64,000 nt of DNA from Octopus bimaculoides (taxonomy: Eukaryota), in contig NC_068986.1 in assembly GCF_001194135.2 (NCBI RefSeq), positions 26,429,308 to 26,493,307 of the forward strand, given 5' to 3'. The number at the start of each line of letters is the position of its first letter. Positions within the stretch are counted from its first letter, which is position 1. Below are positions 735 to 42,400 of this stretch, in pieces. The notes under the pieces were generated by a model. That model did no database searches and was not told the DNA's origin. It saw only the letters and a program-made list of their open reading frames with translations. The position numbers and the translations under genes were made by a program.

Positions 735-1019
735 CATCATCATCATCATCATCGTTTAACATCCGCTTTCCATGCTAGCATGGGTTGGACGATTTGACTG
801 AGGACTGGTGAAACCGGATGGCAACACCAGGCTCCAGTCTGATTTGGCAGAGTTTCTACAGCTGGATGCCCTTCCTAACGCCAACCACTCAGAGAGTGTA
901 GTGGGTGCTTTTACGTGTCACCCGCACGAAAACGGCCACGCTCGAAATGGTGTCTTTTATGTGCCACCCGCACAAGCCAGTCCAGGGGCACTGGCAACGA
1001 TCTCGCTCGAAAATCCTAC
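735..1019 (-). mobile_element. RTE-LINE 3'-tail-derived repeat, young copy
   Basis: (CAT)n-GTTTAAC..TTTCCATGCTAGCATGGGTTGGACG..; near-identical copies at 22333-22630, 48669-48782, 49430-49750 and 57659-57799; runs into an N gap. Confidence 0.75.
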
Positions 1020-1249
1020 NNNNNNNNNNNNNNNNNNNNNNNNNNNNNNNNNNNNNNNNNNNNNNNNNNNNNNNNNNNNNNNNNNNNNNNNNNNNNNNNN
1101 NNNNNNNNNNNNNNNNNNNNNNNNNNNNNNNNNNNNNNNNNNNNNNNNNNNNNNNNNNNNNNNNNNNNNNNNNNNNNNNNNNNNNNNNNNNNNNNNNNNN
1201 NNNNNNNNNNNNNNNNNNNNNNNNNNNNNNNNNNNNNNNNNNNNNNNNN

Positions 1250-1490
1250 AAAGGTCTCGGTCAGTAGTCATCGCCTCGGTGAGGCCCAATGTACGAAGGT
1301 CTTGCCTCACCACCTCAGCCCAGGTCTTCCTGGGCCTACCTCTTCCACGGGTTCCCTCAACTGTTAGGGTGTGGCACTTTTTCACGCAGCTATCCTCATC
1401 CATTCTCACCACATGTCCATACCAGCGCAATCGTCTCTCTTGCACACCACAACTGATGCTTCTAATGTTCAGCTTTTCTCTCAAGATACT
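1250..1490 (-). mobile_element. RTE-clade LINE ORF2 C-terminal fragment
   Basis: Translation VQERRLRWYGHVVRMDEDSCVKKCHTLTVEGTRGRGRPRKTWAEVVRQDL matches the RTE LRWxGHxxRM...GxRxRGRPRxxW motif. Confidence 0.85.
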
Positions 1491-1518
1491 TACATATATA
1501 TATATATATATATACATA

Positions 1519-1900
1519 CAGGGTGGCCCAAAAGTAGGTTTTCAGTTATTCAACAATCTCTTTTGCATTCATATATTATCAGTTCTGATCTTAAGTATAA
1601 AAGAAACATGAAACCATTATTCTATGCTAATTTAGTTAATTTTGTCAAGCTCCTTTTTCAGTTGACTGTAAGAGACTACCTTAACCAAGCTTTTCACAGC
1701 ATTGGTTTGGAAGACGGGGTAGCATCAAATGGCCTCCACATTCACCAATGGATTTTGTGTTTTTTTGGAGTGTTGTAAAGAACAAGGTTTTGAGCCTAGT
1801 TTGGTAAGCTAACAGAGAATGCATTACTTATAAGTAAACCACCTTATGGCACTTATTTAGAACATAAACAGAAAAAAATGTCTTAAACCCTCACCTTTAG
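1519..1900 (+). mobile_element. Degraded Tc1/mariner relic
   Basis: TA|CAGGGTGGCCCAAAAGTAGG terminal motif at 1519; near 1728-1790 it encodes a frameshifted WPPHSP..MDF.FFG..KNKV, the mariner WPPxSPDLxPxDF C-terminal block. The right end is uncertain. Confidence 0.6.
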
Positions 1901-2058
1901 ACCTGGAGGCCAATACCTTATTGATTTAGTCAGCTGTGACTCAATACATGTTTATTAAACATATTAACAACAAAGAATTATGCAATTATGTTATTCTTAA
2001 TTTCTTTAAAGATTTTTCTCTTGTTTTCAGTAAAACCAAAACGTTCGAATGCACAAAT

Positions 2059-2490
2059 ATGACTGGCGTTCCTGAAGGTGATAAGAGTAACAAATATGAT
2101 TGCATTATAGTCTATTGTGAAAAAGATGAAGATGAAGTCAAAAACATACAAAATGAATTGCTAAAAATTGAACTAAATGATGAAAAACCTCTCAATATTG
2201 AACTGGAGGAATATGTTGGAGGTACATCATTTAAACGACCTGAACATTTACAAAAACTTAAAGATAAAGCGTTATTCATTTGTGTTTTAATTTCAGACAC
2301 AATAACTGACATTACTAAACATGAATATCATGAACTCTTAAATGACAACCATGGTAGGATACTGCCAATCCTCTTGCATCCTCGTTGTATGATTTCTGGT
2401 TTCCAAAGTCTTAATTGTATTGATTGGACTAACAAACATAAACTAGACAAATTTAAAAACATTGTCATCAAGAGAAGGAAGAGAGACTAA
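2059..2490 (+). CDS. TIR-domain-only protein, 143 aa, TRAM/TRIF(TICAM)-like
   Basis: Intact ORF with A at -3 of the ATG, downstream of a ttgttttcag acceptor at 2030. TIR topology: bA YDCIIVYC, aA EKDEDEVKNIQNELL, BB loop EEYVGG, bC ALFICVLIS, aC DITKHEYHELL, bD RILPILL, bE LNCIDW; basic tail KRRKR. Upstream coding exons cannot be excluded. Confidence 0.8.
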   Translation: MTGVPEGDKSNKYDCIIVYCEKDEDEVKNIQNELLKIELNDEKPLNIELEEYVGGTSFKRPEHLQKLKDKALFICVLISDTITDITKHEYHELLNDNHGRILPILLHPRCMISGFQSLNCIDWTNKHKLDKFKNIVIKRRKRD

Positions 2491-2601
2491 AATTACTCAT
2501 GAAATACAAAATGAATTGAATAGGTTAAATTTCAAATTAGTTTTCTGTTAGAATTAAGGCAATTTATAGAATAGCAAAAATTAAACTACTCTGGTGAATA
2601 T

Positions 2602-2988
2602 AATACTATATTTAAGAGATGAGGAATTATGTACATTATTTACATTTGTCGGATATTTGACCTCATCTTTGTTGTTACCATGTTTTGGCTGATATACCCT
2701 CCAGCCTTCATCAGGTATCTTGGGGAAATTTCGAACCTGGGTTCTCATTCCTAAGGTATTTTCCGATGTTTTTATTATTATTATTATTATTCAGATCACT
2801 GCCTGGAATCGAACTTGGAATCTTGGGGTTAATAGCCTGCCCTCTTAACCACGACACCATATGCCCGTGGGCATATTGTGTAGTGGCAAATTTCCCAAGA
2901 CACCTGATGAAGACTGGAGGGTATATCAGCTGAAATGTGTTAACAACAAACAAGATGAGGACAAATATCTGTCAAATGTAAATAATGT
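2602..2988. mobile_element. Penelope-like foldback insertion with ~100-bp inverted arms and degenerate hammerhead cores
   Basis: Arms 2633-2730 and ~2888-2988 are reverse complements; each carries CTGATGA-A-G(G/A)CTG-GAGGGTATAT-CAGC(C/T)-(G/A)AAA; flanking direct repeat CTGGTGAATAT at 2591-2601 and 2989-2999; tRNA-like SINE sequence in the spacer. Confidence 0.65.
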
Positions 2989-7259: not shown

Positions 7260-10200
7260 TTAAGCAGATGCGTCAAAAAATTTATCGATCATTTTGCCAA
7301 CATCTTCTACGGAGTATTTGATATATTTATCAGGATTTTTTGTGAAGTTCAACTGAGTATATTTGTCTCGAAACATTTGGTACATTGGAAGGATGTAATC
7401 TTTGTTTTCTTTCTTTAATGACTGTCTTAAATCGAGGTCTGGAATAGCATAGCTTTTTTGAATGCGGTAAATCTCTTCTAATTCTTTGTTGAAACCCTAG
7501 AAAAGAAAATTTGAAGTAAATTTTGAAGACAGTAATAAAGTACTGCTTTGAGTTACATAGTAAACTTATACACACACACACACAAACACAGATAACACGT
7601 GTGTGTGTGTGTATTTATACATGAATACTCAATTACAAATAGATTTCTTTATTTATGAATAAAAGACTGGGAAGTAGGAAAAACATGGATTATTTAAAAG
7701 AATTTACTGAAATGTGTAAATGTAGTAATTCTAATTAAAGAAATTAAAAAATTCAATTATAGACATTTGTAATCAAGACAGCTTGGATATCAAATAGAGT
7801 ATGTTCCTTTGTACCACTTCAAATTTGTTTAAGTTGTTAGCAATGAAGAAATGAAAATACAAGATTTAATTAAAAAATGTTATTTTCTCTGTTGTAATAT
7901 TTTCCCAACTAATCACTTCATGCTTGTATTTCACTGTTACTGATCAGTCTCCTGGTTTTAGAAGGTTCTCTTAATTGGTTTTCTACCTTCCAACTTGTCA
8001 AAATGAAGTGCATGAATAAATATGGAAATACAAGCATATCTCAGCTTAATGCTGTTTTGAGTTACATCTTTTTTGACTTTGTCATTTTTTTAACCCTTTA
8101 GCATTCAAACCAGCCACATCAGGCCCAAATATTCTACATATTTTGTGTTCAAACTGACCAGATCAGACCTCTCATAACTAACCAGCAAAGTCATTCTAAA
8201 AGTAAACAAACACGTCACTGAAATCTTGAAGCTACAAGATAATGTATGATAAATTTAAAACAAAGTGACAGACATTAGAATAAATAAGCATTCTGTTTGA
8301 CAGAATAATCTGAATGCTACAGAAATTAATTGGAAAAATAACCTTCAACTCCAGTTGATTTATCCAACTTTATGTTGATCTCAGTGAACATATTTTAAAA
8401 ACATAAAAATTGTAAAGCCACTTAAAAACCAATACTAAAGTGGAAAATCATAAAATATATGTGGAAATATATGCAACCCTTTTTTAAAAACAAATATAGG
8501 AATCAGTTCACCAACTGCAAAGATAAATATTTTGAAAAATAAATGTACTTACAGTAAACTTATCTTTAATATTTTGTCTTTCTTTATCTTTTAGCTGAAA
8601 TGAATTATAAATGAATTAATTACATGATTAAAAATGAAAATAAAAATTTAATACTGTGAGAAACTGTGTTTTATGTTTTATGTATGCTTGTGCCATATTT
8701 TTCAGTTTTTCACAGAAACTTAACAAAAATCTATTATAGAGTAATTCCAAAATATTTATTAACCAAGCACAAAGAAGTCAGACTACAATGTATGTGCACG
8801 TGTTTCTTTATTAAATAAGTGACAAATATCACCACTGGAATGAAAATGATAAACAAGATTTTTAAAATCATTCTTCTCCAATAAAATATAATAAAAATGT
8901 TCCAGCTCCATGACAACAAGGTATTTTAATATTAATTTCAAATTTTGGTACAGGGCCGCAGTTTTTGAGGGAAGGGTAAAGATGATTACATCAACCCTAA
9001 TACTTGACTGGTACTAACTTTATCAACCCCTAAAGGACAAAAGACATAGTTGACCTCAATGGAACTTGAACTCAGAAAGTGAAGACATATGAAATGCCAC
9101 TAAGTATTTTGTCTGGCATGCAAATGGTTCTACCAACTTGCTACCTTAAGGTATTTTCATATTAAAACTGTTATATTTTGGCCAGGCATGAATATATTTA
9201 TATTGATTGTCATTAGACATGGACAAAACAACAAAACATCAATAGTGAGAAAACATTTTAAGGCTTTCTCAAGTTTAATGACACAAATTATTAGTAATGA
9301 CTATGAATTACCTTAGCTAGTTCTGGTTGCTGTGCTCGTTGAACAGAAATTGGTTTGTGAACTTCCAAAATATAATGTAGAACTCGGCTCCAACTAAAAA
9401 CAAAGAAAATAAACTTTAAAAATCCAGTAATAATGTAAAACATAAAGTGGAGAAAATATTTTTTAAAATTATTTTTAAATCAATTAAAGATTCTGTAACA
9501 ATTTTCAGCATAGTATACCCCCAAAAGCATCCAGTCCACTTTGTAACATGGTTGGCATTAGGAAGGGCATCCAGCCACAAAACCCATGCTAAAACAGACA
9601 GTGAAATCTGATGCAGTCCTCTGGCTTGCCAGCTCCTGTCAAACCATTCAACTCATGCCAGCATGAAAGATAGATATTAAATAATGATAATGATGAAAAA
9701 AGAACAAAACCTTTTGTTATGTATCTCACTTGTAAAGGTACATTTATAAAGCATTTAGTGTTTGGTACTGCTCCTCTAAGTCAATCTCAGACACCACAGT
9801 CTCTCTAGCTATAGTTTGTACTAAAGTTTAACTGAAAAATCCATTAATGAAGCTGATGGGTGCAAAGGACTTCCACTGAACCCCAAACCTCTTTAGCACA
9901 AAGCTAGTGAGAGATTACCTGGATAGCACACTTCTTTATTCTATCAACTTTATATTAGGTACAATGATTGACATGGTACACAGGCCATTAATTGCAGCAT
10001 CGGTGAAGCATTGTTCTATCATGTTTTTCAAAGTTAATAACCACTTAGAGCCATTACCATTCACAAGAATCTTGTGGCCATTGAGGTTTATATCCTTGTC
10101 TGCTCTCAAAGTAGAAGCAATGCTAACAGGATAAGATTCATTAGAAATTCTTAGCTATAGTCTCTTACTTGAAGAAACTGGGAAGACATCAGTATCAGTT

Positions 10201-22151: not shown

Positions 22152-25100
22152 TTACACACACACATATATACACTCACACACATACATATATACACTCATA
22201 CACATACATACAGACACATACATACAAACACATATATACACTCACACACGTATATGTACACATATATACACACACACACACTCACAAACACATACATATG
22301 CACACACACACACACATGTATTGAAATGAAGTTTGACTGGCCTTGTAGGGTTTTCGAGCGAGATTGTTGCCAGTGCCCCTGGACTGGCTTGTGCGGGTGG
22401 CACATAAAAGACACCATTTCGAGCGTGGCCGTTTTCGTGCGGGTGACACGTAAAAGCACCCACTACACTCTCTGAGTGGTTGGCGTTAGGAAGGGCATCC
22501 AGCTGTAGAAACTCTGCCAAATTAGATTGGAGCCTGGTGTTGCCATCCAGTTTCACCAGTCCTCAGTCAAATCGTCCAACCCATGCTAGCATGGAAGGCG
22601 GACGTTAAACGATGATGATGATGATGATGAAATAAATCATTTGTTATTTGAAAGAAATTGGCAAGAGAGAATACTTACTTTGATGTTTTCTATGAAATCA
22701 TCCAAAGCTTTTGCACCCTGCAATGGAAAGGCAAAACATGATAGAAATATGAATAAAATTACTTCTATTAAAGATAAATATTCGAGGATGAAAATATATT
22801 CTAATTTATCAGTTTTCTGAAAAGATGTTAGGAACAATTGAATCTAGATAAATATGGCAATGACGGAAAATGAACATTACTTACTGTAGAGTCCAGTACA
22901 GATAACAGTGATGCCAACTTAGATCTTGTTGGAGCTTGGCAGCCCTATAAAGAATCAAAAAGTGTTTTTCTTGAAACCCTATACTGTTGAAACTATTAAT
23001 ATGCATAAAAAAGTGATATTTAGTTGGTGGAGAGGGGCAGAGTCAGCTTATTCAAAGATAGGGGCTTGTTTGATGTAAAAGAATTAAGTTTCATTTTATA
23101 TATATGAGTCCAGCTTTCAATTTTGTCATTTTTTTTTTGCGTCATCATTTAACGCTGGCATGGGTTGGACAGTTTGACCAGAGCTGGCAAACTGGAAAGC
23201 TGCACCAGACTCCAGTCTGATTTGGAATAGTTTCTACAGCTGGATGCCCTTCCTAAAGCGGTTGGTGTTAAGAAAGGTATCCAGCCATACAAACCATGCC
23301 AAAATAGACTGGATCCTAATGCAGCTCTCCGGCTTCCTAGCCCTTGTTAAACCGTCCAACCCATGCCAGCATGGACAGCAGATGTTAAATGATGATGAGC
23401 ATAGTATCTAAAGTGTCACAGGTTATTAATAACAGGTGTTGTAAGGTTGATACAATGTTATTGTTAATATAATAAAACTCACCTCTAAAGTAAGATCAAA
23501 TTGTGGTTTAATGCAGCGTAAATGCTGTACAATAGGAAATATTGACAAAACTGATGTGTATTCATGACGAGCAATGTTCTTTTTAGCATTTGTAGCTATA
23601 GCCTTGGAAAAAGAAAAAAAAAACAATTAATAATATCTTGGTTTCAAATTTTGGCACAAGGCCAGTAATTTTGGGGAGTGAGCAGATTGATTAAATTGCC
23701 CCTAGTGTTCAACTGGTACTTATTCTATCAACCCCAAAAGGATGTAAGGCATAGGAGACCTTGGCAGAATTTGAACTCTGTAAAGACAGACGAAATGCTG
23801 CTAAGGATTTCCCCCCAGTACGCTAATGATTCTGCCAGCTCACTGCCTTTAAAAAGAAAATAATAACATATTGGGTTGTCTGGAAAGTTTGTGCTGATTT
23901 TTAAAGGAAAGAAAAAGGTCAATAAATACTTGCCATTACATTTTTAATCAACCAAATATGAACCATTTTGTTGCACAATGCGTCTCTATCTTTCCTTTAA
24001 CTTGAAAATACCCTCTTCCCCGAATGGAGGTCATTTCATGGCAAATAAGTCGAAAGGTAAGCTACTATAAATTGGCACGAACTTTCCAGACAACCCAATA
24101 TAATTAACATAGAATGAAATAACACTTTGAAAGCAGCAGAGATTTGAATGAACAGTTAATGTGATTTTTGTTTAATTTCAGATATTCTGAACATCATATT
24201 ATTTTCGGTATCAAGAAATATTATCAAGGATCAGTTGGCAGAGGAGATCCTTGTTCAACATTGAAAGGACAAAAAAAATAAATTAAAAGAAAGTGGTGTA
24301 GCTATCTGGTTCACCAGTTCTCAGTCAAATCGTCCAACCCATGCTAGCATGGAAAGCGGACGTTAAACGATGATGATGGTGATGATTATTTTGATCTTTT
24401 ACTATATTCAGCCATTGGGCAATGGCCATGTTGGGGCACTACATTTTCAGTTCTGAGACCAATGTAATTTCAGCTTGGTCTTTATTTTATCGATCTCTGT
24501 TTAGAAGCTAAGTCACCTTTTGACATAAAGGGACATGATTGAATACACTGGTTTACACTATTAAAACAAGCACACAAACACACACATAAATATATATACA
24601 CCTTTTATCTTTTACCTGTTTCAGTCATTGGACTGTGGCTAAGCTGGAGTACCACCTAGAAAGGTTTTAGTTGAACAAATCAACCCTAGTACTTATACAG
24701 GGTGGGGCATAAATACTGTTACAAAAGTTCAAAACTATGTTTCATAATTATATTCAAAGAATTCTAATGATTTATTTGAGTTAAATGATAGTTATTATAT
24801 GTTTTCTTGTATTTCAGAAACTAAATATTAAAATTTTGTTGCAATGTCTGTTGAATGGAAGAGAAAATTCATCATAGAGCAACATGAGAAGGGCATGCGT
24901 CCACCTGAAATATTCAAGTTAGGGAAAAACCTCATCAAAAATGTTAGGGAAAAATTCAGACGAAATCCAAGAAGATCCATGAGGAGAATTGCAAAAGAAG
25001 CACAAACATCGCCAAGGACTATGCAGAGGATATGCAAAAGTGACCTAAAGTTGTCACCCTATAAACTCCAAAAAAGACAGCTTCTCTCCACGCCCACAAT

Positions 25101-28100
25101 TGAAAAGAGACTCAGCAGAAGCAGACTCTTGTTGAACCGTACTAAAGATGGCATGCTCCGTAACATCATCTGTAGTGATGAAAAGTTATTCTCAGTTCAA
25201 CAGTCTCACAATCATCAAAATGACCGAATCCTTGCTAAAAGTATTAAGGCAATACCTGGTAATGCAGGAAGGGTTTTCAGAACCCAAAAACCAGCATCAG
25301 TGATGGTCTGGGCAGCCATTTCTGAAAGAAGGAAAACTCCACTTGTTTTTGTCCCTCAAGGAATCAAGATAAACAAAGAACAGTACATCGAGGACATTCT
25401 GGAAGGCGCGTTNNNNNNNNNNCTCTTGATTATTCTTTGTGGTCAATTCTGGAGAATGAAGCCTGCTCTACTCCTTGCCAAAATATTGAAGCTCTAAAGA
25501 AAAAATTGACCAAGTGCTGGAATAAAATACCCTTAGATGTTGTGCGTGCTGCTATAGATGACTTCCCAAAAAGACTTCGTAGTGTTGTGAAGGCACGAGG
25601 TAAACATTTTGAATAAAAGTTACACCATATTGTTCCTTGGGCATTTGCAAAGCATATTTTGTAATAGTGGGTTGTTAAATAAATTTTTGTCGGGATAAAT
25701 CTGTTTTATTTTGTAACAGTATTTATGCCCCACCCTGTAGTATCAGTCTCTCCTGTTGGACCACTTAGTTACAAGGATTTAAACAAACCTACACCACCAT
25801 TTGTAAAGCTATAGGAGAGGGGGACAAACATAACATAAAGATACAGATGCACACACACACACAACACATGATGGCCATCCACACAGTTACTGTCTACAAA
25901 ATTCACTCATATGGCATTTTGGTTGTCCAAAGTGACACACAATGGGATTGAACCCAAAACTATGTGGTTGCAAAGCAAAATTTTTAACCACACAACCATG
26001 CCTATGCTTATATAATATATGACAGCCTTTCACACAATTTTTATCTATCAATTTCTACTCACATAGTAACATGATATATGTAATTTCATCTAAGATATCA
26101 TATCATTAGAACAAAATTACTATCCTTGATGTTTCTTCACTCAGATGCATCCTTAAAATAGACACATGCAATAAAAAAATAGTAAGTTTATTTTGGGGAA
26201 ATATCTACCTCTCCTTCACTAACCACCATCTCTAGTGCTCGTAGAATGACTTTATCAAACTCCATACGCTGATATTTTTCTGGAATAATACCATTCATTA
26301 GTTGTGCTTCACTCTGAAATTATACATAAAACAAATTAATAAAATTATAGATAAAATAGACATTTGCTAATTATAGTTGAAAAGAAAGTTAAGACCAGTT
26401 TGGAATCATCTCAATCATTTTGGCTCAGAATACATGTAACCTTTAAGGTTACATGTATTATGAGGCAAAATGATTGAGTAGTTAAGTAGCTGAACCATTA
26501 CAAACATTGTATTGTGTCCCTGGGAAAGATCTTTTAATACACTTTCCACAATTAAGTTAACAAGTTTACTTCCAGTTCATGGTCAGAGTGGGTAAAACAT
26601 TAAACTGTATAAGCAAATGCTTTACAAATGTAAAAGTTTACAAAAAGCCATCACATTAGATACTTTAAAATTAAATATTTGTGATGTGTCATACATGCAT
26701 TTCTAGTTCTCATTACAAAAGATAATTTTATGAGACTCCAGCAAATAAGATCTGAAGAAGGAATTCTAATTCCGAAATATCATCGGACTATAGTTTACCA
26801 AGTTACAACAGGTATATAGTCCATTTTTGTTCTATAGTGCAGTGTTATACCTTCCTAAAGTTTTTATTCTTTACAAACAATACACAATGCTTCAAGCGAA
26901 CTACAATACTCTCCTATTTCTTTTCATATTTTGAAAACAATGCAATCTTTTACGCCATCAAATACAGTAAGTTTAATGGTTTAAAGTATCAAAATGAACA
27001 ATTGATGAGAAGATCTACTGCAGATTTGTTTCGATCAAAATAACATGGGAAAATGAAGTGAATGTAGTTATGAAAAATGAAAAATGAAAAATGATAAACA
27101 GTTACAGTTTCAGATATCATGTTCTTACTTGCATTAACTTGAGCAAAGCAGTCATCTCTGTAATGTAAAACTCCACCTCAATCTCAGCAGGGTCTTCTTT
27201 TACACCTTCTGTAGATGAGCCGGTTCGGCGATGACCTACACAGAACAAACGAACATTTTTCTTCCGAGTTAAAATATTTTCAAACTGAAAACATTTTTTA
27301 ATGAAATTTCCATTCTTCATAAATCTACAGCATTATAGCCTATTTTAAGTGAAGCATATAAATCAACTTACCAGATTCAAATGAGGATTTGATGAGAGAT
27401 GTAGAGGCTTTCTTCAGATATCTGAATTAACAGAAAAAGGATTACAAAACGATGAATATGAAAAAGGATAAAACTGAGAAAAAAAAAAAGGTTTCTTTTA
27501 AAGTATGAAATAAAATTTTAACAAGGATATAGTCATTGAAATTGATTTCAGTATAGTACTAATAATTCCGATGGGATCTGAGCCCAAAAGGATGAGACAT
27601 CAAACTAGAATACACAAAGCAATTAGCCTGATGCTCGACTAATACAATTATTCAATAATAGGGAATTGACTTACTGTTTGTATATTACTGATATTAATAT
27701 TATTAACCCTTTCAACCTGGAAATTTTTCTCAAGAATTTTCTCTCAAATCACTAATGGCNNNNNNNNNNNNGGGGGGGGGGGAGAGGGCTTGTATGCATG
27801 CGAGCCTTTTGAGCCGTCATTATAGTGTCATACACTCCGATCATACATCCGGCGCTACATACTTTCAAGAAAAACTGGAGCGGTACTACACTGCATCATA
27901 TAGAATGGGAATTTTAAAGATTTGGGTTGTAAAATTTTTGACTGGTACACATATATGTACCAGCCAGGCGGAAAGGGTTAAAGTAACTGAACCTCTGTTC
28001 AAACCATACTGGAATACGAAACATGTAAAAGGATGAAATATTAAATTTCAATTTGACTGAAATATTAATTGTCATTGAACTTGCCCTTGAAGAGCCATCT

Positions 28101-31100: not shown

Positions 31101-34100
31101 ATTCACGTAATTTTAGTTAAATAATAAAAAATAATCAGGCACAGGCATAGTTGTGTGGTAAGAAGTTTGCTTCCCAATCACATGGCTCCAGGTTCGGTCC
31201 TGCCATGTGGCATCTTGGGTAAGTGCCTCCTACTATAGTCCTAGGCAAGCCAAAGCCTCATGGGTGGATTTGGAAGATGGAAACTGAAAATAGCCTATCA
31301 TGTCTGTGTATATATGTATGTGTGTGGATTTGGGTCCCTTTATCTTGATACCATGTGATAATCATAAAAGTGTTGTCACTTGCATACAAGCAGTGCCAGT
31401 TATTTCTAATATCCTGCGAGAATATGTCTGGCCATGAGGAAATATTATCTTGCATAAAAACAGGTAAAGATTGGCAAAAGGAAGGGCATCTGGTTGTAGC
31501 AAATCTGCTTCAATACTATCCAATTCATGCAGGCATAGAAAAGTGAATGTAAATATGATGATGAGTCAAAAACAAAAGCAAAAAATTTAGTCAGTGTTTA
31601 CTTACTAAAGCAGGGGAATGTTGAGTGTATCCACAGTTGCTACTACCACTAGCCGATTTCAAGTGCTCTTTAAGACTGAAAAAGAAAACAAAAAAAGAAA
31701 CATACAATGAAATTGTTAAAAAGCTAACATACAAAAATAAATGTTCATTATTTTGTGAATTATGAATAAAACTCCAATTTAATTATATTGCCAACATATT
31801 CAACATTGAAGTTAAGATGTTGGCATATCAACAGCCTTCACTAGAGCTCAGACTCTGTTGCAATCATTTAAACCTCTGATTTCCCTCCTTATCCACATTT
31901 AACCATAAAACTTTGATGTGATGATCTGCAAGCTTGACATCAGCTGCAACAATCTCACCTATCCGGAACAATCAGGAAAGGTCAACAGCACAGTTTTGCT
32001 TTTTCTGATTAAATTATAATAATCCTTTCTACTATAGGCACAAAGCCTGAAATTTTTGGGAAGAGGATAGTAGATTATATCAGCTTAACTGGTACTGTTT
32101 TCATTGACACCTAAAGGATGAAAGGCAAAGTCAACTTTAGAGGAATTTGAACACAAAATACTGCTAAGCATTTCGTCTGGCATGCTAACGATTCTATCCT
32201 ACTCTAGGCACAAGGCCTGACATTTTTGGGGAGGGAGCCAGTCAATTAGATTTACCCCAGTATGCAACTGGTACTTAATTTATTGACCCCAAAAGGATGA
32301 AAGGCAAAGTCGACCTTGACGGAATTTGAGCTCAGAATGTAAAGACAAACAAAATACTATTAAGCATTTTGCCCAGCATGCTAACGACTCTGCCAGCTCA
32401 AAGCCTTTGATTAAATTATAATGATGAAAAAACAAAAAACCTATTGATTTCTGCACACTCAGCACACCATACTTAATTTTAGTCCAGTCTCTTCAGCTCT
32501 TCTACATTAATCGTCCATGTTTCATGCAAAGTCAATTTATGTAAGATTAAATACAAATGATTTGAGAAAATAGAGTATTGGTCAAACCAAGCATAAGCTG
32601 CAGCTACATTAGTATGAATATAATGTGAATGGATGATATATGGAGGGGGAGGCAAAGTAGTTTGAGATGAAAAGGGAGAAGTTTCTGATCAGGAAAAATA
32701 TCTGGGAATCTCAGAAGTGATAACAACAGATCTAAAAACACAGAATGTCATGGAAGAGATGGCAAGGGATCAGAATGATTAATGGTTTCAGGTCCAGTCT
32801 ACTGCATAGCACCTTGGGCAAGTATTTTCTTTTCTAAAGCCCCAGGGTGACTAAAAACCCATGTAAATAGATTTCATAGACAGAAACTGAAAGAAGCTTG
32901 TCATATACGAAGGGTGCTGAAAAGTTCCTGGCTTTAAGGATATCACAAAAGGCCTGGTTGAAGGCCCAACCTTTTAAGTTCTTTTACAGGGTTTAGGAAA
33001 ACTAAAGGACTGCTGCAGTAAGTGTATGAATCTGATAGGGGAATATGTTGAATAAAATCATAGTCAACTGATCCTCCTGTTTTTTCTCTTACCCAAAACC
33101 AGGAACTTACAGCACTCCCTCGTATGCATGTATACATATACATATGTGTGTGTGGGTGTGTGAAAATACCCTTCCCTTGACATTATGTGATATGTGTAAA
33201 CAAGCATCACCACCATACATACAATGTTTATTTCTACAGTTTAATGACTGAAACTAGTAAAAGATAAATGACATCTCACTTCCCTAAAGAAAACAATTAT
33301 AGAAAGTAAGGAAGTACCGGCCTTTAAAGATAGAAACTCACCCATGTAATGATCGCACAAGTATGTCAGATCTGGACGATGTGTAAACATTAAGGAAATT
33401 CGTCGTATTGCCATTGGTTACTAGCCATCTACTGATGTCGCCAAGTTCTTTCGCCACCTTTTCTGGTAGATGTTCAAGTATATCTGGTTCTCCATTGCCT
33501 GATTGAAGCTCTGTCAACAGAAAACAGCAATAAACCATACACATGGAATAAATAAATAATGTATATAATAAACAGTTTAACAGAGAGACATTTACTTGTT
33601 GCACTAAAAAGCTAACTTGAAATATGTTACTGGGGACAAAGCAATATTAATTAATGTCTAATATCTTTTTGTTTTTTATATACATAGATGCAAGCGTGGC
33701 TGTGTGGTAAGAAGCTTGCTTCCAAACCACATGGTTTTGAGTTCAGTCCCACTGTATGGTGCCTTGGGCAAGTGTCTTCTACTATAACCACGGGCTGACC
33801 AAAGTCTTCTGATTGGATGTGGTAGATGGAAACAGAAAGCCTGCCATGTGTGTGTGCATGTTTGTCCCCCACCACCACTTGACAACCGATGTTGGTGTGT
33901 TTACGTCCCCATAACCTAGCAATTCAGCAAAATAGACCGATAGAACAAATACCAAGCTTTAAAAAAAGTTTCATTTCACTCTAATTTCTTCAAGGTGATG
34001 TCTCAGCATGGCCACAGTCTAATGACTGAAACAAGTAAAATGTGTACATCAAATATGGGAGACAACTCTAGATGTCTTTCAATCTGACCTCATCAGTGAC

Positions 34101-37100
34101 ACAGTCTTCACCACACTTACTATTATTGTTATGAAATAATCATTAAGTAAATGTACAAGATTGCACACTGGTGGCACAAGAGAACAGAATTGTTAAGAGA
34201 ATACGTAAGTAAAAATAAAATGCCATCTCCATGAAAAAAATAACAGTTCAGTTAGTGCTAACATATTTAATGCAGGGAACATGTACAATAAGTACCTATA
34301 AAACCAAACAGCTATAGAAGACAAAAAACAATGTTTTGTAAATATACATAATGTAAAAAGTGATAACGAAAAACTTTTTTCATGTGTCTAGTATAAATTG
34401 AATTTCAAGATTAGAAGTGATTTTTCATCAAAACAAATTTTTAAGCAGCCTACATACCTTCATCAGTTCCCAACATATCCAGAATGAGAATAGGGGGAAC
34501 AGGTTTACCATATCTGGATAACTGAGACTCAAATTCTTTACCAAGCACTTCTTTACCATCTTCAAATAACTGAACCTGAAAAGAGAACAAAAATTCATCC
34601 AGGAAATTTATTATCATTATAAAGTCACTAAGTAGCAGGAGCTTTTGTCTTTCAAAGTACTTGGGAACCTCACTAGAGCTACTGGCATAAAAAAAAGAAC
34701 CCAGTACATACTGTAAAGTGGTTGGTTGGCATTATGAAGGGCACCCAACCATAGAAACCAAGTCAAAGCTGACATTGGAGCTCAGCATAGCCCTGCAGTT
34801 TACCAAGTCCTGCTAAATGATCCAAGCCGCCACCGCCACCACCGAGTGTATCAAAGTGTATCAAAATTATGATTAGAATGTACAAATATGGCTAAACTTC
34901 AGTCATTGAAGATCAAAAGGGATATGTCAGTACATAACAAAAAAACACTGAAGTGAGTAGAACATAGTTAGCATGATTGGAGAGTACATTCTGGTCAGAG
35001 TCAATTCTTATTTGGAGTTACTGCCCTCCTTTGTTCAATCAATTTTTTTGATGATTAATTAACTATAGGAACACTAAGTACTGGTGATTAGGATAAAGCT
35101 CACTGTTTAGTGTATTTTTAATAAATTAATCTCAGCTTGACAAAGCTTTGCACATGCCAGGAAATTTATTATTTGCTGTTTACTTATAAGAACAGCAGTT
35201 CTTAGTAAGCTATGAATGCTGGATACAATGTCTGTAGTTAATGAAGTGTAATAACACAGAAGCATGGCCTATTGTCATATGATGTCATTTATAGCCCAGT
35301 TTAGTGTGTTTTCATGCACACATCGTCTACAAGAATTTCTCTTCCAAGACATTTACTGCAGCAAAGGCCTTTTCACGTTTGAACAGGATATTAAGTTTAC
35401 ATAATTACTTACTACTTCTGTCAGTTCCAAGCTACCTGGATTGTGATCTTTAAAATAGCGAACAGCTTTCAGAACACTTTCCATATGTTCCAGATATTTC
35501 TCCAGCCCACTGGCAATTGGTCTAGAAAAGCAGGCAGAAAAAAATATAACCATGAGGGAGAAAGAGAAGAGGGAATACACACATACACAAAGAAGAACGA
35601 GAGAGATGATATATCAGAGAATTTATAGATATGAAAGAAATAAAGAGGGAGTTAAAGAAAGATTCTAAATGCTTGTTTTTTTTTTTTGTTAATTCATATA
35701 ACTAATTGACTGCTTTTACCAACTCTGTTGTAAATGAAATAGGTATCAATAATATAGTAAGATCATTTCAATGTCTTGTGCAGTCAACTTAGTATTTCAT
35801 ACTGACATATCTTACAAGCCATACATCTTACTACTAATGCTCTTTGCTCTGTGAGAACTTTCTCTGAGATCCAAGAACCAGAAAATATCTAATATTACTT
35901 AAACACTAATGATAATATTTGGAGGAAGATAAATGTATGAAACTCCTATTTCTCATTAGCAACACTAATTTTAGAAAAACGTCATCAGCATTTCCAGCAA
36001 ACTTCATGAAGCTGCATCAAAAAAAAAACAAAACAAGGTATTCCTTTCAGAACAAAAGTGTTTCATTCCAGAACACTTTTTGGTTTTCTCTATACCCAAA
36101 TAAAGCCAAATAATGCTCTCTACACTCATCCATTAATGGCAATCAAATAATCCAAACATATCCACTGATCTGATAAGATAAATTCTTAAACTTTTGATAA
36201 TCTATTTTTCATCCACCTCTTCTATTGATAACAAAGTGCTTATGAGAATTTGCTAGCTGCATCCATTCTTCATGAACGGAACTACTGTGCTTGTCTCTAA
36301 GCTTTCCAGTATTTTCTGTCTCTTAATCTAACCACATCGTAAACACTACCTGCTATATTTCATTCCAATGTTTTGTATCCAGTAAAATTCTCTCTCCACT
36401 CATAGGTTCTCACAATACATTAACCTGCTTTTCCAAGTTTCAGATTAACTACATCAATATTAGTCATACTCCTCTTTCACTTTGCTATTTGGAGGGTATT
36501 CTTTGGACTAGGGTTAATGTCCTTCCTCCTTGTGCACACACACAGAGTATTGACGATAATTATGAAAAGATACATTAATTAAGGAACAAATTGATGCATT
36601 TTAGTGTAAAACATATAAAGAACTCAACAAAAAAGTTTCGTCAAAGACAACTCACCCTTCCTTGATGGCAAACTCTAGATCTTTAGCTATATGATAATAT
36701 CCAAGTACATTGTCAAGAGTTGACATTGTTTTATCAATGTCTGGTGACATTAAGGAATGCAACTAAACATAAATATAAACATATAATTACAGAAGTCAGC
36801 TCAGTTTAATAGTTAAGCACTAGCAACAGTATGCTTTTCAATTATGTACAATTAGACAGGTTATTACAGAAATTTTGAATTAACAGTATCAATACACAAA
36901 TCTTACACATACACCCACCGAAAAAGTTAATTCCAAACTGCTACAACCATAGTGTGTTTGGCCAGTAACCTTGTGGGCATCGGTGCCAATTTTTTCTTCC
37001 TCCGTTTTCCCGTTCTTTGAACTTTCCTTGTTTCCAACGAAGGTCTCCGCCTGAAACATCATACTCTCTCTCTTTCCTTTCCTGAGCGTCTAATAACACT

Positions 37101-39439: not shown

Positions 39440-42400
39440 ATGGGACGCAGATCTATAAACACCACTAAAAGTGGGAAGTATATGAACCCCACTGATCAAG
39501 CCAGTAAGTTTTATTTTTCGTATAGCAATAAATGTTTAGAATCGATGTTAAAGGAGCATCAATGAGTTTATTTATCCTAAGTGCCCCCCGACCAAATCTC
39601 AGCTCCTGAGTTTTCTGTAAATGGTTTTGTTATTTGACTCCTATTAATTTTTACGCTTGGAATTATTGCCTCGGTGATTTATTTTCTTGACATCATTGCA
39701 TTAATAAACTAATAATTAACATTACTTGTTATGCTAATTGGTCATTGAAGTGAAGGGTTTTGCAAACATATTTTGTGTTATTTTTTTCCTGAACTGAATT
39801 CAGTGAAATGGTAACAGAAAGTCCTTTCAGGCCGATTTTAGTTAAGCATGAAGAAAAATAACTGTCTACGCATTATTTTCTCCTTACAACACAAATGATA
39901 TTGCAATGTTAAAACTGGGTGAATTGTGAACTAGAGAAAAAATACTGCGATAAGGAAATAGAAAAACAACGGAGCAAGGATAAATTATAATAAAATGTTA
40001 TTCATCAAGAAATGAAATGGAATAAACTCTGATTATATTGACAATCTAGAGAAAATATATGACTAAACTTCTCTGATTTTGTATTTTTGGTTTGAATGCA
40101 TTTTGGAACTTTGGTATGTTGCATTTACATGACCAGATATTCCACTATGAGGTCTGCAATTTCAAACTTTTGCCAAAAGCCTTAGATATACTCTACTCTT
40201 TTACTTGTTTCAGTCATTTGACTGCGGCCATGCTGGGGCACCACCTTTAGTCGAGCAAATCGACCCCGGGAATTATTCTTTGTAAGCCTAGTACTTATTC
40301 TATCGGTGTCTTTAGCCGAACCGCTAGGTGACGGGGACATAAACACACCAGTATCGGTTGTCAAGCAATGCTAGGGGGACAAACACAGACATACAAACAC
40401 ACACACATATATATACATATATGCGACAGGCTTCTTTCAGTTTCCGTCTACGAAATCCACTCACAAGGCTTTGGTCGGCCCGAGGCTATAGAAGATATTT
40501 GCCCAAGGTGCCACGCAGTGGGACTGAACCCGGAACTATGTGGTTGGTAAGCAAGCTACTTACCACACAGCCACTAAATATGTTTCTAATTGATATAAGA
40601 CAAACATTCTTTTGATTGATGTCTTTTGTTGTTTAGCCCTAGGTAAGTATCGATTAAGCAGATCTGTAATCAGATGTATTCTTGCCACATCTGATCCAAT
40701 CTATATTTCAAGCTTAATGTATCTAAGACAACATCATACATTATATTGTATGGTAAGTAGCTTGCTTACCAACCACATGGTTCCGGGTTCAGTCCCACTG
40801 CGTGGCACCTTGGGCAAGTGTCTTCTACTATAGCCTTGGACCGACCAATGCCTTGTGAGTGGATTTGGTAGGCGGAAACTGGAAGAAGCCTGTCGTATAT
40901 ATATATATATATGTGTGTGTGTATATATCTTTGTGCGCTTGTGTTTGTCCCCCAACATCGCTTGACAACCGATGCTGGTGTGTTTACGTTCCCGTAACTT
41001 AGCGGTTCGGTGAAAGAGACCGATAGAATAAGTACTAGGCTTACAAAGAATAAGTCCTAGGGTCGATTTGCTTGACTAAAGGCGGTGCTCCAGCATGGCC
41101 GCAGTCAAATGACTGAAACGAGTAAAACAGTAAAGAAAGTTTGGCTGCTGTTTCTAACAAGTCAAGTGATCACATAAAAACTTCCTCATTGTCTGGCTTT
41201 TAAATTAGTGCTCACCGAAGTAGATGAAAGCTTCCGTAAAAATGCATAGCATATGTCACACATTGATAACCACATTTATGAATATGACAAGTGGATCACT
41301 TTTTATTTTTCATCTTATTGACCTGAAAATCTTCAGTCTGAGAGGTAGCAAGCAAATCTCATATGGTCTGCAACAAAACTACAAACAGCAAATTCAGTAC
41401 CAAACATTTCAATCAAAATATATATATATAAAGAAATGTAACTAGAAAGAATCCAGTAATAAATGACGTAATTAAGAAAAAAAGAACCATTAGAGAATTA
41501 GGTGCATCATATTATTGGATGGTATGTGGTAGAATCAATAGGGCATCTTTTAGTTACATACTGTGTTCAAATCCTACCAAGGTCAGCTTTATCTTTCATC
41601 TTTTCCATGGTTAAAATTAGTAGTAATTAAGTACTGGGGTCAGTATAATCAAGCATGTGTCCTCCTCTGAATTTATGGTCTCCTATCAATTGTAGGAATC
41701 AGTTTAAGTCTATTTGAAGATAGCAAGCTGGCAGAATTGTTAGCATGTTGGGCAAAGTGCTTAGCAGCATTTCTTCCATCTTTATATTCAGAGTTCAAGT
41801 TCTGCCAAGGTCATCTTTTTGGGGTTGATAAAATAAGTACCAATTAAGCATTGGGGTCCATGTAATCCCCTGAAATTGCTGGTCTTGTACCAAAATTTGA
41901 AACCAATTAAGTCTATTTGGGTCTTCTCACTAGCTTCCCAATTTTCACTACTTCTTCAAAGTAAGTAGTGGTTCTGAGGAATATCAACTGATCACATTTT
42001 AATTTTATGGGGTAGCAATGAAGCTAAGTATAAATTTTTTGTGTTTACAATTGTAGTAGTAAATACAGTCATAGCTATCTAGTTAAAAATGCTCACTTTG
42101 TAGCCATATGGCTCAAGTTTGATCCCACTTTGTTAAGCCTTGGGCAAGTGTCTTCTACTGTAGCTTTCAAGAAACCACTAGTTTGGGGTGAAATTTTGGA
42201 GATGAAAACTGTGTGGAAGCCCATTATATATATATATATATATCATTTGATGTGTATTTGTGTTTGTTTCTGTCAAGATTGTAAAACTTCACCATTGTTG
42301 ACCTGGGACTAAACAGTTGATACACTCACTGAGTAATAAGTCAACATTAAGGGGCATAGCTGGTTGAAACCAGTTCATGCAAATATTCAGCTCTGAGTAA

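What the first reader, a model, noticed from the sequence alone, without database searches (positions are those of the whole stretch)
2059..2490. Compact TIR-only gene resembling TRAM/TRIF adaptors but retaining a SARM1-type catalytic glutamate
Seen: an intact 143-aa single-exon ORF with full TIR secondary-structure order, no transmembrane, LRR or death domain, and a C-terminal KRRKR patch. Established: TRAM's TIR begins FVILHAEDDTDEALRVQNLL, matching IIVYCEKDEDEVKNIQNELL here. TICAM-type adaptors are classically described from chordates. NADase TIRs (SARM1, plant and bacterial TIRs) need an alphaC Glu; SARM1 has D-W-V-H-K-E, and this protein has D-I-T-K-H-E with the same spacing, whereas TRAM has Q there. 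The BB-loop proline is replaced (EEYVGG). Inference: a stand-alone cephalopod TIR that may be a MyD88-independent adaptor, a decoy, or an NAD+-cleaving/signal-producing immune enzyme. This is the best candidate for an undescribed system in the window.
Basis: partly seen in the sequence, partly recalled or inferred. Interest (0 to 1): 0.78.

Follow-up and report, generated by a model that had tools for sequence, protein, structure and literature searches.

The report
Octopus-only small TIR-domain protein gene

Summary
The 143-aa ORF at 2059-2490 (+) is real. It is Octopus bimaculoides LOC106880740, an "uncharacterized protein". Orthologues turned up only in octopods: O. sinensis/vulgaris, an unnamed octopus and Argonauta hians. 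No paralogue was found.

It is a divergent TIR domain. Pfam TIR_2 scores 27.3 bits (cut-off 28, E 5.7e-6) over the whole profile, and all five orthologues hit it. Human TRIF's solved TIR scores only 23.7. Profile-profile scores beat decoys for animal TIRs but not for plant or bacterial ones.

TRAM is the best single match, but weakly. A TRAM-family profile scores TRIF, MAL, TLR2 and bacterial TcpB higher than this protein, so TICAM membership fails.

The proposed catalytic Glu (E89) falls in the catalytic column in no multiple alignment. That column holds E92 or H91, depending on the method. The strand-A serine that pairs with the Glu in NADase TIRs is Val here, a hydrophobic residue as in the adaptors.

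The gene is not single-exon. RefSeq models add 5' exons, and Argonauta's start codon lies in a separate exon.

Both AlphaFold runs failed (pLDDT 45), so no structural test was possible.

Most likely it is a small cytosolic TIR-only adaptor or regulator. NADase activity is unlikely but not excluded. It is a new member of a known kind, of modest interest.

The parts
2059..2490 (+). Coding sequence of the conserved 143-aa TIR-only protein, including the TAA stop. It equals residues 29-171 of XP_014786317 (O. bimaculoides LOC106880740 isoform X2).
   Evidence: ORF read directly. 100% identical to P0001. Orthologues of 143 aa in O. sinensis/vulgaris, an unnamed octopus and Argonauta.
2107..2463 (+). 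TIR domain, residues 17-135.
   Evidence: Pfam TIR_2 27.3 bits, E 5.7e-6, profile positions 3-121 of 122. All 5 orthologues hit TIR_2. hhalign scores against animal TIRs are above decoys.
2110..2112 (+). Val18, in the column of the strand-A serine of NADase TIRs (SARM1 Ser567).
   Evidence: MAFFT alignment: Ser in SARM1, L6, RPV1, TcpB, PdTIR, TLR1 and TLR2; Leu or Cys in TRAM, TRIF, MyD88 and MAL; Val in all five octopod proteins.
2206..2223 (+). BB-loop segment EEYVGG (residues 50-55). Gly54 stands where TLR, MyD88 and MAL have the box-2 proline.
   Evidence: Alignment. It lies in the strongly constrained block of codons 33-84. Argonauta reads EGYVRS.
2317..2337 (+). Start of helix C: K87-H88-E89-Y90-H91-E92-L93. 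K87 is in the canonical Trp column (Trp in Argonauta). H91 or E92 occupies the catalytic column.
   Evidence: E92 in L-INS-i and G-INS-i, H91 in E-INS-i; hhalign against TRAM and the TLRs places H91 or a gap there; against TcpB and RPV1 it places E89, with probability under 5%.
2470..2484 (+). C-terminal basic patch K138-R142 (KRRKR).
   Evidence: Read directly. Only R140 is invariant among the orthologues. In the unnamed octopus the sequence past window 2480, inside the last codons, is replaced by a repeat.
2032..2058 (+). 5' part of the coding exon upstream of the conserved ATG. It is in frame and open (KTKTFECTN). The splice acceptor cag is at 2029-2031.
   Evidence: Sequence. Both RefSeq isoforms join here in the same phase.
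1805..2031 (+). Intron of RefSeq isoform X2 (GTAAGC ... polypyrimidine tract, CAG).
   Evidence: Contigs from a related octopus run colinear through it, so they are genomic.
1749..1804 (+). Alternative first exon of isoform X2 (MDFVFFWSVVKNKVLSLV). It is not shared with X1 or with the orthologues. It looks like the C-terminal remnant of a Tc1/mariner-type transposase, and is probably 5' UTR rather than conserved coding sequence.
   Evidence: tblastn 100%. Frame translation ...GRRGSIKWPPHSPMDFVFFW. The transposase resemblance is from memory only; a Pfam scan of the 47-aa piece found nothing.
2580..2585 (+). Candidate polyadenylation signal ATTAAA, 90 nt after the stop.
   Evidence: Pattern search. 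No transcript data were examined.

Best explanation
The locus encodes a small cytosolic protein that is essentially one compact, highly divergent TIR domain and is found only in octopods.

Most likely it works by TIR-TIR association. It would dock onto the TIR domains of octopus Toll-like or IL-1R-like receptors or MyD88-type adaptors. There it would act as a bridging adaptor or, since it has no effector module, as a competitive regulator or decoy of those assemblies.

Shown:
- Gene structure, TIR homology, restriction to octopods and single copy.
- Strong purifying selection on strand B, the BB loop, helix B and strand C, with near-neutral change elsewhere.
- Adaptor-like rather than NADase-like residues at strand A.

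Inferred:
- The binding partners and the direction of the effect (activating or inhibiting).
- Any membrane or nuclear targeting by the basic C-terminal tail.
For: TIR homology:
- TIR_2 is hit by all five orthologues over the full profile.
- Solved TIRs score in the same range: TRAM 36.7 bits, TRIF 23.7.
- hhalign scores against animal TIRs are TRAM 27.4, TRIF 22.6, MAL 21.3, MyD88 21.2 and TLR1 20.2. Reversed, column-shuffled and CheY decoys give 10-14, with a maximum of 19.5.
- Plant and bacterial NADase TIRs score at decoy level, 12-15.

Adaptor-like features:
- Strand A reads YDCIIVYCEKD, like MyD88 FDAFICYCPSD and MAL YDVCVCHSEED. It has a hydrophobic residue where NADase TIRs have Ser.
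- Only TIR_2 is found, and the longest product is 173 aa.

Selection and conservation:
- Against a related octopus, codons 33-84 carry 7 synonymous and 1 non-synonymous change. The rest carries 5 synonymous and 30 non-synonymous. The constrained block covers the BB-loop face that TIRs use for homotypic contacts (established knowledge).
- The ORF is intact in Argonauta at 51% identity, with the same Exo70 neighbour.
Against: - No experiment or expression data were seen.
- The TIR_2 score is 0.7 bits under Pfam's cut-off.
- The structure could not be predicted (pLDDT 45 twice), and Foldseek on that model found no TIR.
- The BB-loop proline important in many signalling TIRs is missing, and the loop differs in Argonauta.
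- Two invariant glutamates (E89, E92) sit at the start of helix C. A 2026 preprint reports that many non-TLR animal TIRs keep the Glu and make cADPR (10.64898/2026.04.20.719644), so an enzymatic role is not excluded.
- Overall dN/dS is 0.46-0.56, and the CDS is no more conserved at the nucleotide level than the adjacent intron (87.6% against 87.0%).
Confidence: 0.5

Rival explanations
1. It is an NAD+-processing TIR enzyme (an NADase or cADPR-type signal producer). An invariant helix-C glutamate, E92 more likely than E89, would be the catalytic residue. The enzyme would be activated by self-association.
For: - E89 and E92 are invariant in all five octopod sequences, inside an otherwise fast-changing segment.
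- Two of three MAFFT modes place E92-L93 on the E-L of the catalytic column.
- hhalign against TcpB, RPV1 and the NADase group places E89 there.
- A preprint reports that most non-TLR animal TIRs keep the Glu, and that TIRs from diverse animals, including a mollusc, make cADPR (10.64898/2026.04.20.719644).
Against: - Anchored on the strand-C Ser, the Trp (present in Argonauta) and the Tyr, the ungapped register puts H91 (Arg in Argonauta) in the catalytic column (E-INS-i).
- Either Glu needs a 1-2 residue indel inside the helix to reach that column.
- The strand-A Ser is described as critical for NADase activity; it lies 2.6-2.7 A from the Glu and S-to-A reduces activity in vitro (10.1101/2025.04.09.647920). 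It is Val18 in every octopod.
- Similarity to the plant and bacterial NADase TIRs is at decoy level, and to SARM1 only marginally above it (score 18.3, decoy maximum 19.5).
- PADLOC models, which include defence TIRs, give no hit.
Confidence: 0.17
2. It is a protostome member of the TICAM (TRAM/TRIF) lineage: a MyD88-independent sorting adaptor homologous to TRAM.
For: - TRAM is the top match of the octopod profile, both as a single sequence (27.4) and as a family profile (31.8, 52.6% probability, 122 aligned columns).
- There are local matches in strand A/helix A (8 of 19 identical) and helix B (HLQKL against HLQNL).
- Like TRIF, it hits only TIR_2 in Pfam.
Against: - The TRAM-family HMM scores 4.0-10.9 bits, against 78 for TRIF, 24.6 for MAL and 12.7 for bacterial TcpB.
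- In hhalign, TRAM's profile scores MAL, TLR2 and TcpB higher than this family.
- A search with TRAM plus TRIF returned 192 proteins. The 120 listed are all vertebrate TICAM2, with no mollusc among them.
- There is no Gly2 for myristoylation, no BB-loop Pro-Cys, and no TRIF N-terminal domain, RHIM or pLxIS.
- The literature places the origin of TICAM in chordates (PMC9440496).
Confidence: 0.06
3. It is a decaying or non-functional lineage-specific ORF, or its TIR_2 match is spurious and the protein has an unrelated fold.
For: - The score is below Pfam's gathering threshold.
- There is no sequence hit to any PDB TIR, even with a profile at E up to 10.
- AlphaFold could not fold it.
- Overall dN/dS is about 0.5, and CDS identity is no higher than that of the flanking intron.
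- The locus is full of transposon remnants.
Against: - The ORF is intact at equal length in four or more octopod species, including Argonauta at 51% identity.
- Codons 33-84 show 7 synonymous to 1 non-synonymous change.
- The TIR match covers the whole profile and recurs in all orthologues.
- hhalign against the TRAM family scores 31.8, against 12.5 +/- 2.4 for column shuffles.
- The alignment recovers box 1, the end of strand C, and the Trp and Tyr of helix C.
Confidence: 0.1

Closest known systems
Uncharacterised cytosolic TIR-domain-containing (TIR-DC) proteins of molluscs (Gerdol et al. 2017, as cited in PMC10279657)
   Same: An intracellular protein that carries a TIR domain and no receptor ectodomain. 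It is lineage-restricted, fast-evolving and of untested function, and is presumed to interact with TLR or MyD88 TIRs.
   Different: - This one is a bare 143-aa TIR with no partner domain.
- It is found only in octopods and is single-copy.
- Cephalopods have the smallest TLR repertoires among molluscs (PMC10279657).
- No direct comparison with the bivalve families was possible here.
TRAM / TICAM-2 TIR domain (PDB 2m1w, 9dlg)
   Same: - It is the best-scoring solved TIR for this family (hhalign 27.4 as a single sequence, 31.8 as a family profile).
- It shares an acidic strand-A/helix-A segment ([IV]-x-[HY]-x-E-x-D-x-D-E) and an HLQxL helix B.
- It has a hydrophobic residue, not Ser, at the strand-A position.
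- Both are small adaptor-sized proteins.
   Different: - It fails the family-profile test (4-11 bits against 78 for TRIF).
- There is no N-terminal myristoylation signal and no BB-loop Pro-Cys.
- The D/E region is much shorter.
- TRAM has Gln in the catalytic column; this protein has His or Glu.
MAL/TIRAP and MyD88 TIR domains (PDB 3ub2, 4eo7)
   Same: - Box 1 is very similar: YDCIIVYCEKD against YDVCVCHSEED and FDAFICYCPSD.
- hhalign scores of about 21 are above decoys.
- MAL is a sorting adaptor that uses a basic lipid-binding patch, which may parallel the basic C-terminal tail here (inference).
   Different: - There is no death domain (MyD88) and no N-terminal PIP2-binding motif (MAL).
- The box-2 proline is absent.
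- The basic tail is C-terminal and poorly conserved.
SARM1 and the plant and bacterial NADase TIRs (PDB 6o0q, 5ku7, 3ozi, 4c7m, 3h16)
   Same: They share the TIR fold family. Invariant Glu residues lie near the start of helix C, one of which (E92) can be placed in the catalytic column if a one-residue insertion is allowed.
   Different: - Similarity is at decoy level for the plant and bacterial TIRs (12-15) and marginal for SARM1 (18.3).
- The strand-A Ser partner of the Glu is Val.
- The W-x-x-x-E spacing is not kept: W/K87-H-E-Y-H/R-E.
- There are no SAM/ARM, NB-LRR or Thoeris partners.

Membership tests
TIR domain superfamily (Pfam TIR_2, PF13676) | Match to the family HMM at or above the curated gathering score | tested here: inconclusive
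   27.3 bits against a cut-off of 28, E 5.7e-6, profile positions 3-121 of 122. All 5 orthologues hit, best E 4e-6. As a control, the solved TRIF TIR scores 23.7 and TRAM 36.7.
TIR domain superfamily (Pfam TIR_2, PF13676) | Profile-profile similarity to solved TIR domains above decoys | tested here: met
   hhalign against the TRAM family scores 31.8, against 12.5 +/- 2.4 (maximum 19.5) for 40 column shuffles. Reversed sequences and CheY give 10-14. TRIF, MAL, MyD88 and TLR1 give 20-23.
TIR domain superfamily (Pfam TIR_2, PF13676) | Box 1 ((F/Y)D-hydrophobic strand A), box 2 (BB-loop RDxxPG) and box 3 (FW) | tested here: inconclusive
   Box 1 is present (Y13-D14-C-I-I-V-Y). Box 2 is degenerate (EEYVGG, with Pro replaced by Gly54). 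Box 3 is partial (F132-K133).
TIR domain superfamily (Pfam TIR_2, PF13676) | Flavodoxin-like alternating strand-helix fold that superposes on solved TIRs | tested here: inconclusive
   Two AlphaFold2 runs gave mean pLDDT 45.4 and 45.0. The strand-helix order is compatible. Foldseek of the model against the PDB gave no TIR and nothing better than E 0.3.
TICAM adaptors (TRAM/TICAM-2, TRIF/TICAM-1) | Family-specific profile scores it like a member, above other TIR families | tested here: not met
   HMM built from 16 TRAM orthologues: TRIF 78.2 bits, MAL 24.6, TcpB 12.7, Argonauta 10.9, this protein 4.0. hhalign: TRIF 117.5, MAL 44.5, TLR2 40.5, TcpB 35.7, this family 31.8.
TICAM adaptors (TRAM/TICAM-2, TRIF/TICAM-1) | TRAM: N-terminal myristoylation signal (Met-Gly...) and BB-loop Pro-Cys | tested here: not met
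   The N-termini are MTGVPE and MAVPLK, with no Gly2. The BB loop has G54-G55 where TRAM has P-C.
TICAM adaptors (TRAM/TICAM-2, TRIF/TICAM-1) | TRIF: N-terminal helical domain, TRAF6-binding and pLxIS motifs, C-terminal RHIM | tested here: not met
   The protein is 143 aa, at most 173 aa in any RefSeq isoform. Pfam finds only TIR_2. No such motif can be read in the sequence.
NAD+-cleaving TIR enzymes (SARM1, plant TNL/TIR-only, bacterial Tcp/Thoeris) | Catalytic Glu on helix C (W-x-x-x-E), structurally within about 3 A of the reference Glu | tested here: inconclusive
   By sequence only. The column holds E92 in L-INS-i and G-INS-i (with a one-residue insertion), and H91 (Arg in Argonauta) in E-INS-i and in hhalign against TRAM and TLR2 (TLR1 leaves the column unmatched). 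It holds E89 only in hhalign against TcpB and RPV1, at under 5% probability. The structural criterion could not be applied because the models have low pLDDT.
NAD+-cleaving TIR enzymes (SARM1, plant TNL/TIR-only, bacterial Tcp/Thoeris) | Conserved strand-A serine next to the catalytic Glu (SARM1 S567, SNC1 S26) | tested here: not met
   Val18 in all five octopod proteins. It is Ser in SARM1, L6, RPV1, TcpB and PdTIR, and Leu or Cys in TRAM, TRIF, MyD88 and MAL. The role of the Ser is taken from 10.1101/2025.04.09.647920.
NAD+-cleaving TIR enzymes (SARM1, plant TNL/TIR-only, bacterial Tcp/Thoeris) | NAD+ consumption or (c)ADPR production that depends on the Glu | not testable with these tools
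   This needs expression and LC-MS or NAD+ assays of the wild type against E89A and E92A.

The most novel reading that the evidence does not exclude
An octopod-specific, stand-alone TIR of only about 125 residues that is catalytically active with a non-canonical active site. The Glu would be displaced by one residue and there would be no strand-A serine. It would produce an NAD+-derived immune signal in an animal lineage that has an unusually small TLR repertoire.
Probability: 0.1. Interest if true: 0.6.

Novelty: new member of a known kind. Interest (0 to 1): 0.3.

Why it matters
If the adaptor or regulator reading is right, this adds one lineage-specific piece to the poorly known cephalopod Toll pathway. 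That is useful for comparative immunology but not surprising, because molluscs are already known to carry many uncharacterised cytosolic TIR proteins.

It would matter more if the protein proved enzymatic. A recent preprint argues that catalysis is widespread among animal TIRs. A minimal TIR that works without the strand-A serine and with a shifted glutamate would test how much of the canonical active site is really needed.

The negative result also matters. It removes an apparent case of a TRAM/TRIF-type adaptor outside chordates.

Tried and rejected
- **AlphaFold2, twice.** A 2-sequence and a 5-sequence alignment gave pLDDT 45.4 and 45.0, which is unusable. Foldseek of the better model against the PDB returned only noise. 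The planned superposition on SARM1 E642 was therefore impossible.
- **PDB sequence searches.** Neither the protein nor the octopod profile hit any TIR, even at E up to 10.
- **Search for more relatives.** The exhaustive HMMER search of 1.8 billion representatives found only two octopod proteins and one spurious repeat protein. The word-indexed search with the 5-sequence profile added nothing. A deeper alignment could not be built.
- **Other family libraries.** PADLOC gave no hit and NCBIfam no meaningful one.
- **Paralogues.** tblastn found no second copy in the window.
- **Literature.** No paper mentions the gene or protein accessions. The supplements of the animal-TIR preprint list other octopus TIRs, but not this protein in the stored text.
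- **Transposase remnant.** A Pfam scan of the 47-aa piece under X2 exon 1 found nothing, so that identification rests on memory.
- **tRNA-derived element.** ARAGORN found no tRNA-like gene downstream of the ORF.
- **Recalled AbTir sequence.** It did not verify against the PDB and was dropped.
- **'Last exon of a long receptor'.** Rejected, because every annotated product is 143-173 aa.
- **Pseudogene.** Considered unlikely, given the 7:1 synonymous to non-synonymous ratio in the core and the intact ORF in Argonauta.
Full report
**1. What is at the coordinates**

The + strand carries an ATG at 2059 and an uninterrupted frame to TAA at 2488-2490, giving 143 codons. The window is AT-rich (35.5% GC), contains assembly gaps and is full of repeats, so it is animal genomic DNA.

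The protein is 100% identical to residues 29-171 of XP_014786317, "uncharacterized protein LOC106880740 isoform X2" of Octopus bimaculoides. The window maps to chromosome record CM046606.1; window position 1 equals position 25576 of locus L002.

**2. Gene structure**

- A strong splice acceptor (ttctcttgttttcag) ends at 2031, 27 nt before the ATG, and the frame stays open between them.
- RefSeq isoform X2 joins exon 1 (window 1749-1804, donor GTAAGC) to this acceptor.
- Isoform X1 joins a different exon, which lies outside the window; its gene model begins about 15.6 kb before window position 1. It splices into the same acceptor in the same phase.
- The two N-terminal extensions are unrelated to each other, and the 143-aa orthologue models of O. 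sinensis and O. vulgaris lack them.
- X2's exon 1 reads ...GRRGSIKWPPHSPMDFVFFWSVVKNKV. I recognise this, from memory only, as the C-terminal motif of a Tc1/mariner-type transposase. Pfam did not confirm it.
- In Argonauta hians the homologous exon begins at (K)YDSIL, directly after an acceptor. The start codon (MAVPLK) lies in a 19-nt coding piece 2.5 kb upstream, followed by GTAAGT.

So the conserved protein is about 143 aa, but the gene is not single-exon and its 5' end is evolutionarily labile. No model adds a receptor, LRR, transmembrane or death-domain part.

**3. Is it a TIR domain?**

- Pfam gives one hit, TIR_2. It scores 27.3 bits against a gathering score of 28 (E 5.7e-6), and residues 17-135 cover profile positions 3-121 of 122.
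- All five orthologues hit TIR_2 independently.
- As a control I scanned solved TIR domains whose sequences I had checked against the PDB. On the same model TRAM scores 36.7 and TRIF only 23.7. A score of 27 is therefore within the range of genuine, divergent animal TIRs.
- An independent profile-profile test agrees:

| Target | hhalign score |
|---|---|
| TRAM | 27.4 |
| TRIF | 22.6 |
| MAL | 21.3 |
| MyD88 | 21.2 |
| TLR1 | 20.2 |
| SARM1 | 18.3 |
| Reversed sequences, CheY, 40 column-shuffled TRAM alignments | 10-14 (maximum 19.5) |

- A MAFFT alignment recovers box 1 (Y13-D14 plus strand A), the Ser at the end of strand C, and the Trp (present in Argonauta) and Tyr of helix C.
- Structure prediction failed twice (pLDDT 45), and Foldseek on the model was noise.

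I accept the TIR assignment at about 90%.

**4. Phyletic range**

- An exhaustive HMMER scan of 1.84 billion representatives found only an unnamed octopus (78% identity) and Argonauta (51%), plus one spurious low-complexity bacterial protein.
- A second search with a five-sequence profile added nothing.
- There is no paralogue in the window.
- Exo70 lies downstream on the opposite strand in both O. bimaculoides and Argonauta, so the loci are orthologous.

In these libraries the family is single-copy and restricted to octopods.

**5. Selection**

I compared the CDS with genomic contigs from the unnamed octopus (88% nucleotide identity).

- dN/dS is 0.46-0.56, and the CDS is no more conserved than the adjacent intron (87.6% against 87.0%).
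- The changes are very unevenly placed. Codons 33-84 (strand B, BB loop, helix B, strand C) carry 7 synonymous and 1 non-synonymous difference. The rest carries 5 synonymous and 30 non-synonymous.
- The core, including the BB-loop face, is therefore under strong constraint, while helix A and everything after strand C evolve near neutrally or faster.
- Within that fast segment, H88-E89-Y90 and E92-L93 stay invariant.

**6. TRAM/TRIF resemblance**

In HMMER's register the strand-A/helix-A stretch matches TRAM at 8 of 19 positions. hhalign also pairs HLQKL with TRAM's HLQNL. TRAM is the top match.

The reciprocal test fails, however. I collected TICAM2 orthologues, built a 16-sequence TIR profile and scored everything with it.

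| Target | HMMER bits | hhalign score |
|---|---|---|
| TRIF | 78.2 | 117.5 |
| MAL | 24.6 | 44.5 |
| TLR2 | not scored | 40.5 |
| TcpB (bacterial) | 12.7 | 35.7 |
| TLR1 | not scored | 32.2 |
| Argonauta orthologue | 10.9 | part of the family profile |
| This protein | 4.0 | 31.8 (whole octopod family) |

From TRAM's side, this protein is no closer than receptor or bacterial TIRs. It also lacks TRAM's Gly2 myristoylation signal and BB-loop Pro-Cys, and every extra module of TRIF. TICAM membership is rejected. What remains is a mild, untested preference for adaptor-type animal TIRs.

**7. The catalytic glutamate**

NADase TIRs share W-x-x-x-E-[LI] at the start of helix C.

- In all three MAFFT modes the Trp column holds K87, which is Trp in Argonauta.
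- The Glu column holds E92 (with L93 on the conserved Leu) in L-INS-i and G-INS-i, at the cost of a one-residue insertion.
- It holds H91 (Arg in Argonauta) in E-INS-i and in hhalign against TRAM and TLR2. Against TLR1 the column is left unmatched.
- E89 reaches the column only in hhalign against TcpB, RPV1 or the NADase group, at probabilities below 5% and with a two-residue gap.

A second criterion depends less on the alignment. The strand-A serine lies 2.6-2.7 A from the catalytic Glu and is reported as critical for NADase activity; the S-to-A mutant has reduced activity in vitro (10.1101/2025.04.09.647920). It is Ser in SARM1, L6, RPV1, TcpB and PdTIR, and also in TLR1 and TLR2. It is Leu or Cys in TRAM, TRIF, MyD88 and MAL, and Val18 in every octopod sequence.

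Similarity to the plant and bacterial NADase TIRs is at decoy level.

Against this, a 2026 preprint reports that most non-TLR animal TIRs keep the Glu and that several, including a molluscan one, make cADPR (10.64898/2026.04.20.719644). The prior for catalysis is therefore not negligible. This protein is not in the stored part of that paper's tables.

My reading is that the enzyme idea is not excluded but is disfavoured, at about 0.17. If there is a catalytic Glu, it is E92 rather than E89.

**8. Most likely mechanism**

A bare TIR with no effector module can act only through TIR-TIR contacts. The conserved BB-loop block and the adaptor-like strand A fit a small cytosolic adaptor or competitive regulator of Toll/IL-1R-type assemblies.

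The basic tail (KRRKR) might target membranes or the nucleus. However, only R140 is invariant, and in the unnamed octopus a repeat replaces the sequence from window 2480, inside the last codons.

Partners and the direction of the effect are inferred, not shown. Confidence is about 0.5.

**9. Comparison and novelty**

The closest known kind is the set of uncharacterised cytosolic TIR-DC proteins of molluscs (PMC10279657). TICAM adaptors are regarded as chordate inventions (PMC9440496), and nothing here changes that.

The gene is already annotated, with a TIR_2 hit, as an uncharacterised protein. I rate it a new member of a known kind, with interest 0.3.

Noticed in passing
window 1690-1804 (+): The first exon of RefSeq isoform X2 lies in a stretch that translates to ...WFGRRGSIKWPPHSPMDFVFFWSVVKNKV. 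This looks like the C-terminal motif of a Tc1/mariner-type transposase, so the annotated N-terminal extension is probably an exonised transposon remnant.
   Followed up: partly
window 957-1517 (-), interrupted by the N gap 1020-1249; a related copy at about 16126-16374 (+): The ORF fragment ...RRLRWYGHVVRMDEDSCVKKCHTLTVEGTRGRGRPRKTW... resembles the C-terminal tail of a non-LTR retrotransposon ORF2. A 78% identical DNA copy lies at 16204-16324.
   Followed up: no
window 2633-2731 and 2888-2988: Inverted repeat arms of about 100 bp, 86% identical, flank about 157 bp just downstream of the gene. The structure is MITE-like, and an (ATT)n run lies at about 2776-2795. ARAGORN found no tRNA-like gene there.
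   Followed up: partly
L003 1479-1545 (and L004-L006); window 40750-40815, 40501-40565, 33705-33769: In the unnamed related octopus, colinearity with the window stops at window 2480, inside the last codons of the ORF. It continues into a dispersed repeat that has three copies in this window. This explains that species' different C-terminal tail (EKRNGK).
   Followed up: partly
window about 7263-37613 (-); L002 32835-38065; L001 15252-22904: An Exo70 (exocyst subunit) gene lies downstream on the opposite strand. Its last exon is at 7263-7496 (...KYIKYSVEDVGKMIDKFFDASA), and likely N-terminal exons are near 35356-35613 and 37356-37613. The same neighbour is present in Argonauta, so synteny is conserved.
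   Followed up: partly
window about 53196-57400 (+): Open frames with an acidic, Ser-rich stretch (…EEDEDEEKDEESDSKDSKEKE…) are followed by long proline-glycine repeats (PPGPPPGLPPGGPPGVPPG…). They are probably exons of a proline-rich nuclear or splicing-type protein gene.
   Followed up: no
L002 7165-18877 (-): A 405-aa gene model without any Pfam hit is annotated on the opposite strand, overlapping the upstream part of the LOC106880740 X1 gene model. It lies outside the window.
   Followed up: no
window 24832-25613 (+): A 221-aa open frame, followed by a fragment ...LDYSLWSILENEACSTPCQNIEALKKKLTKCWNKIPLDVVRAAIDDFPKRLRSVVKARGKHFE. This looks like a Tc1/mariner-type transposase copy interrupted by a 10-N gap.
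   Followed up: no
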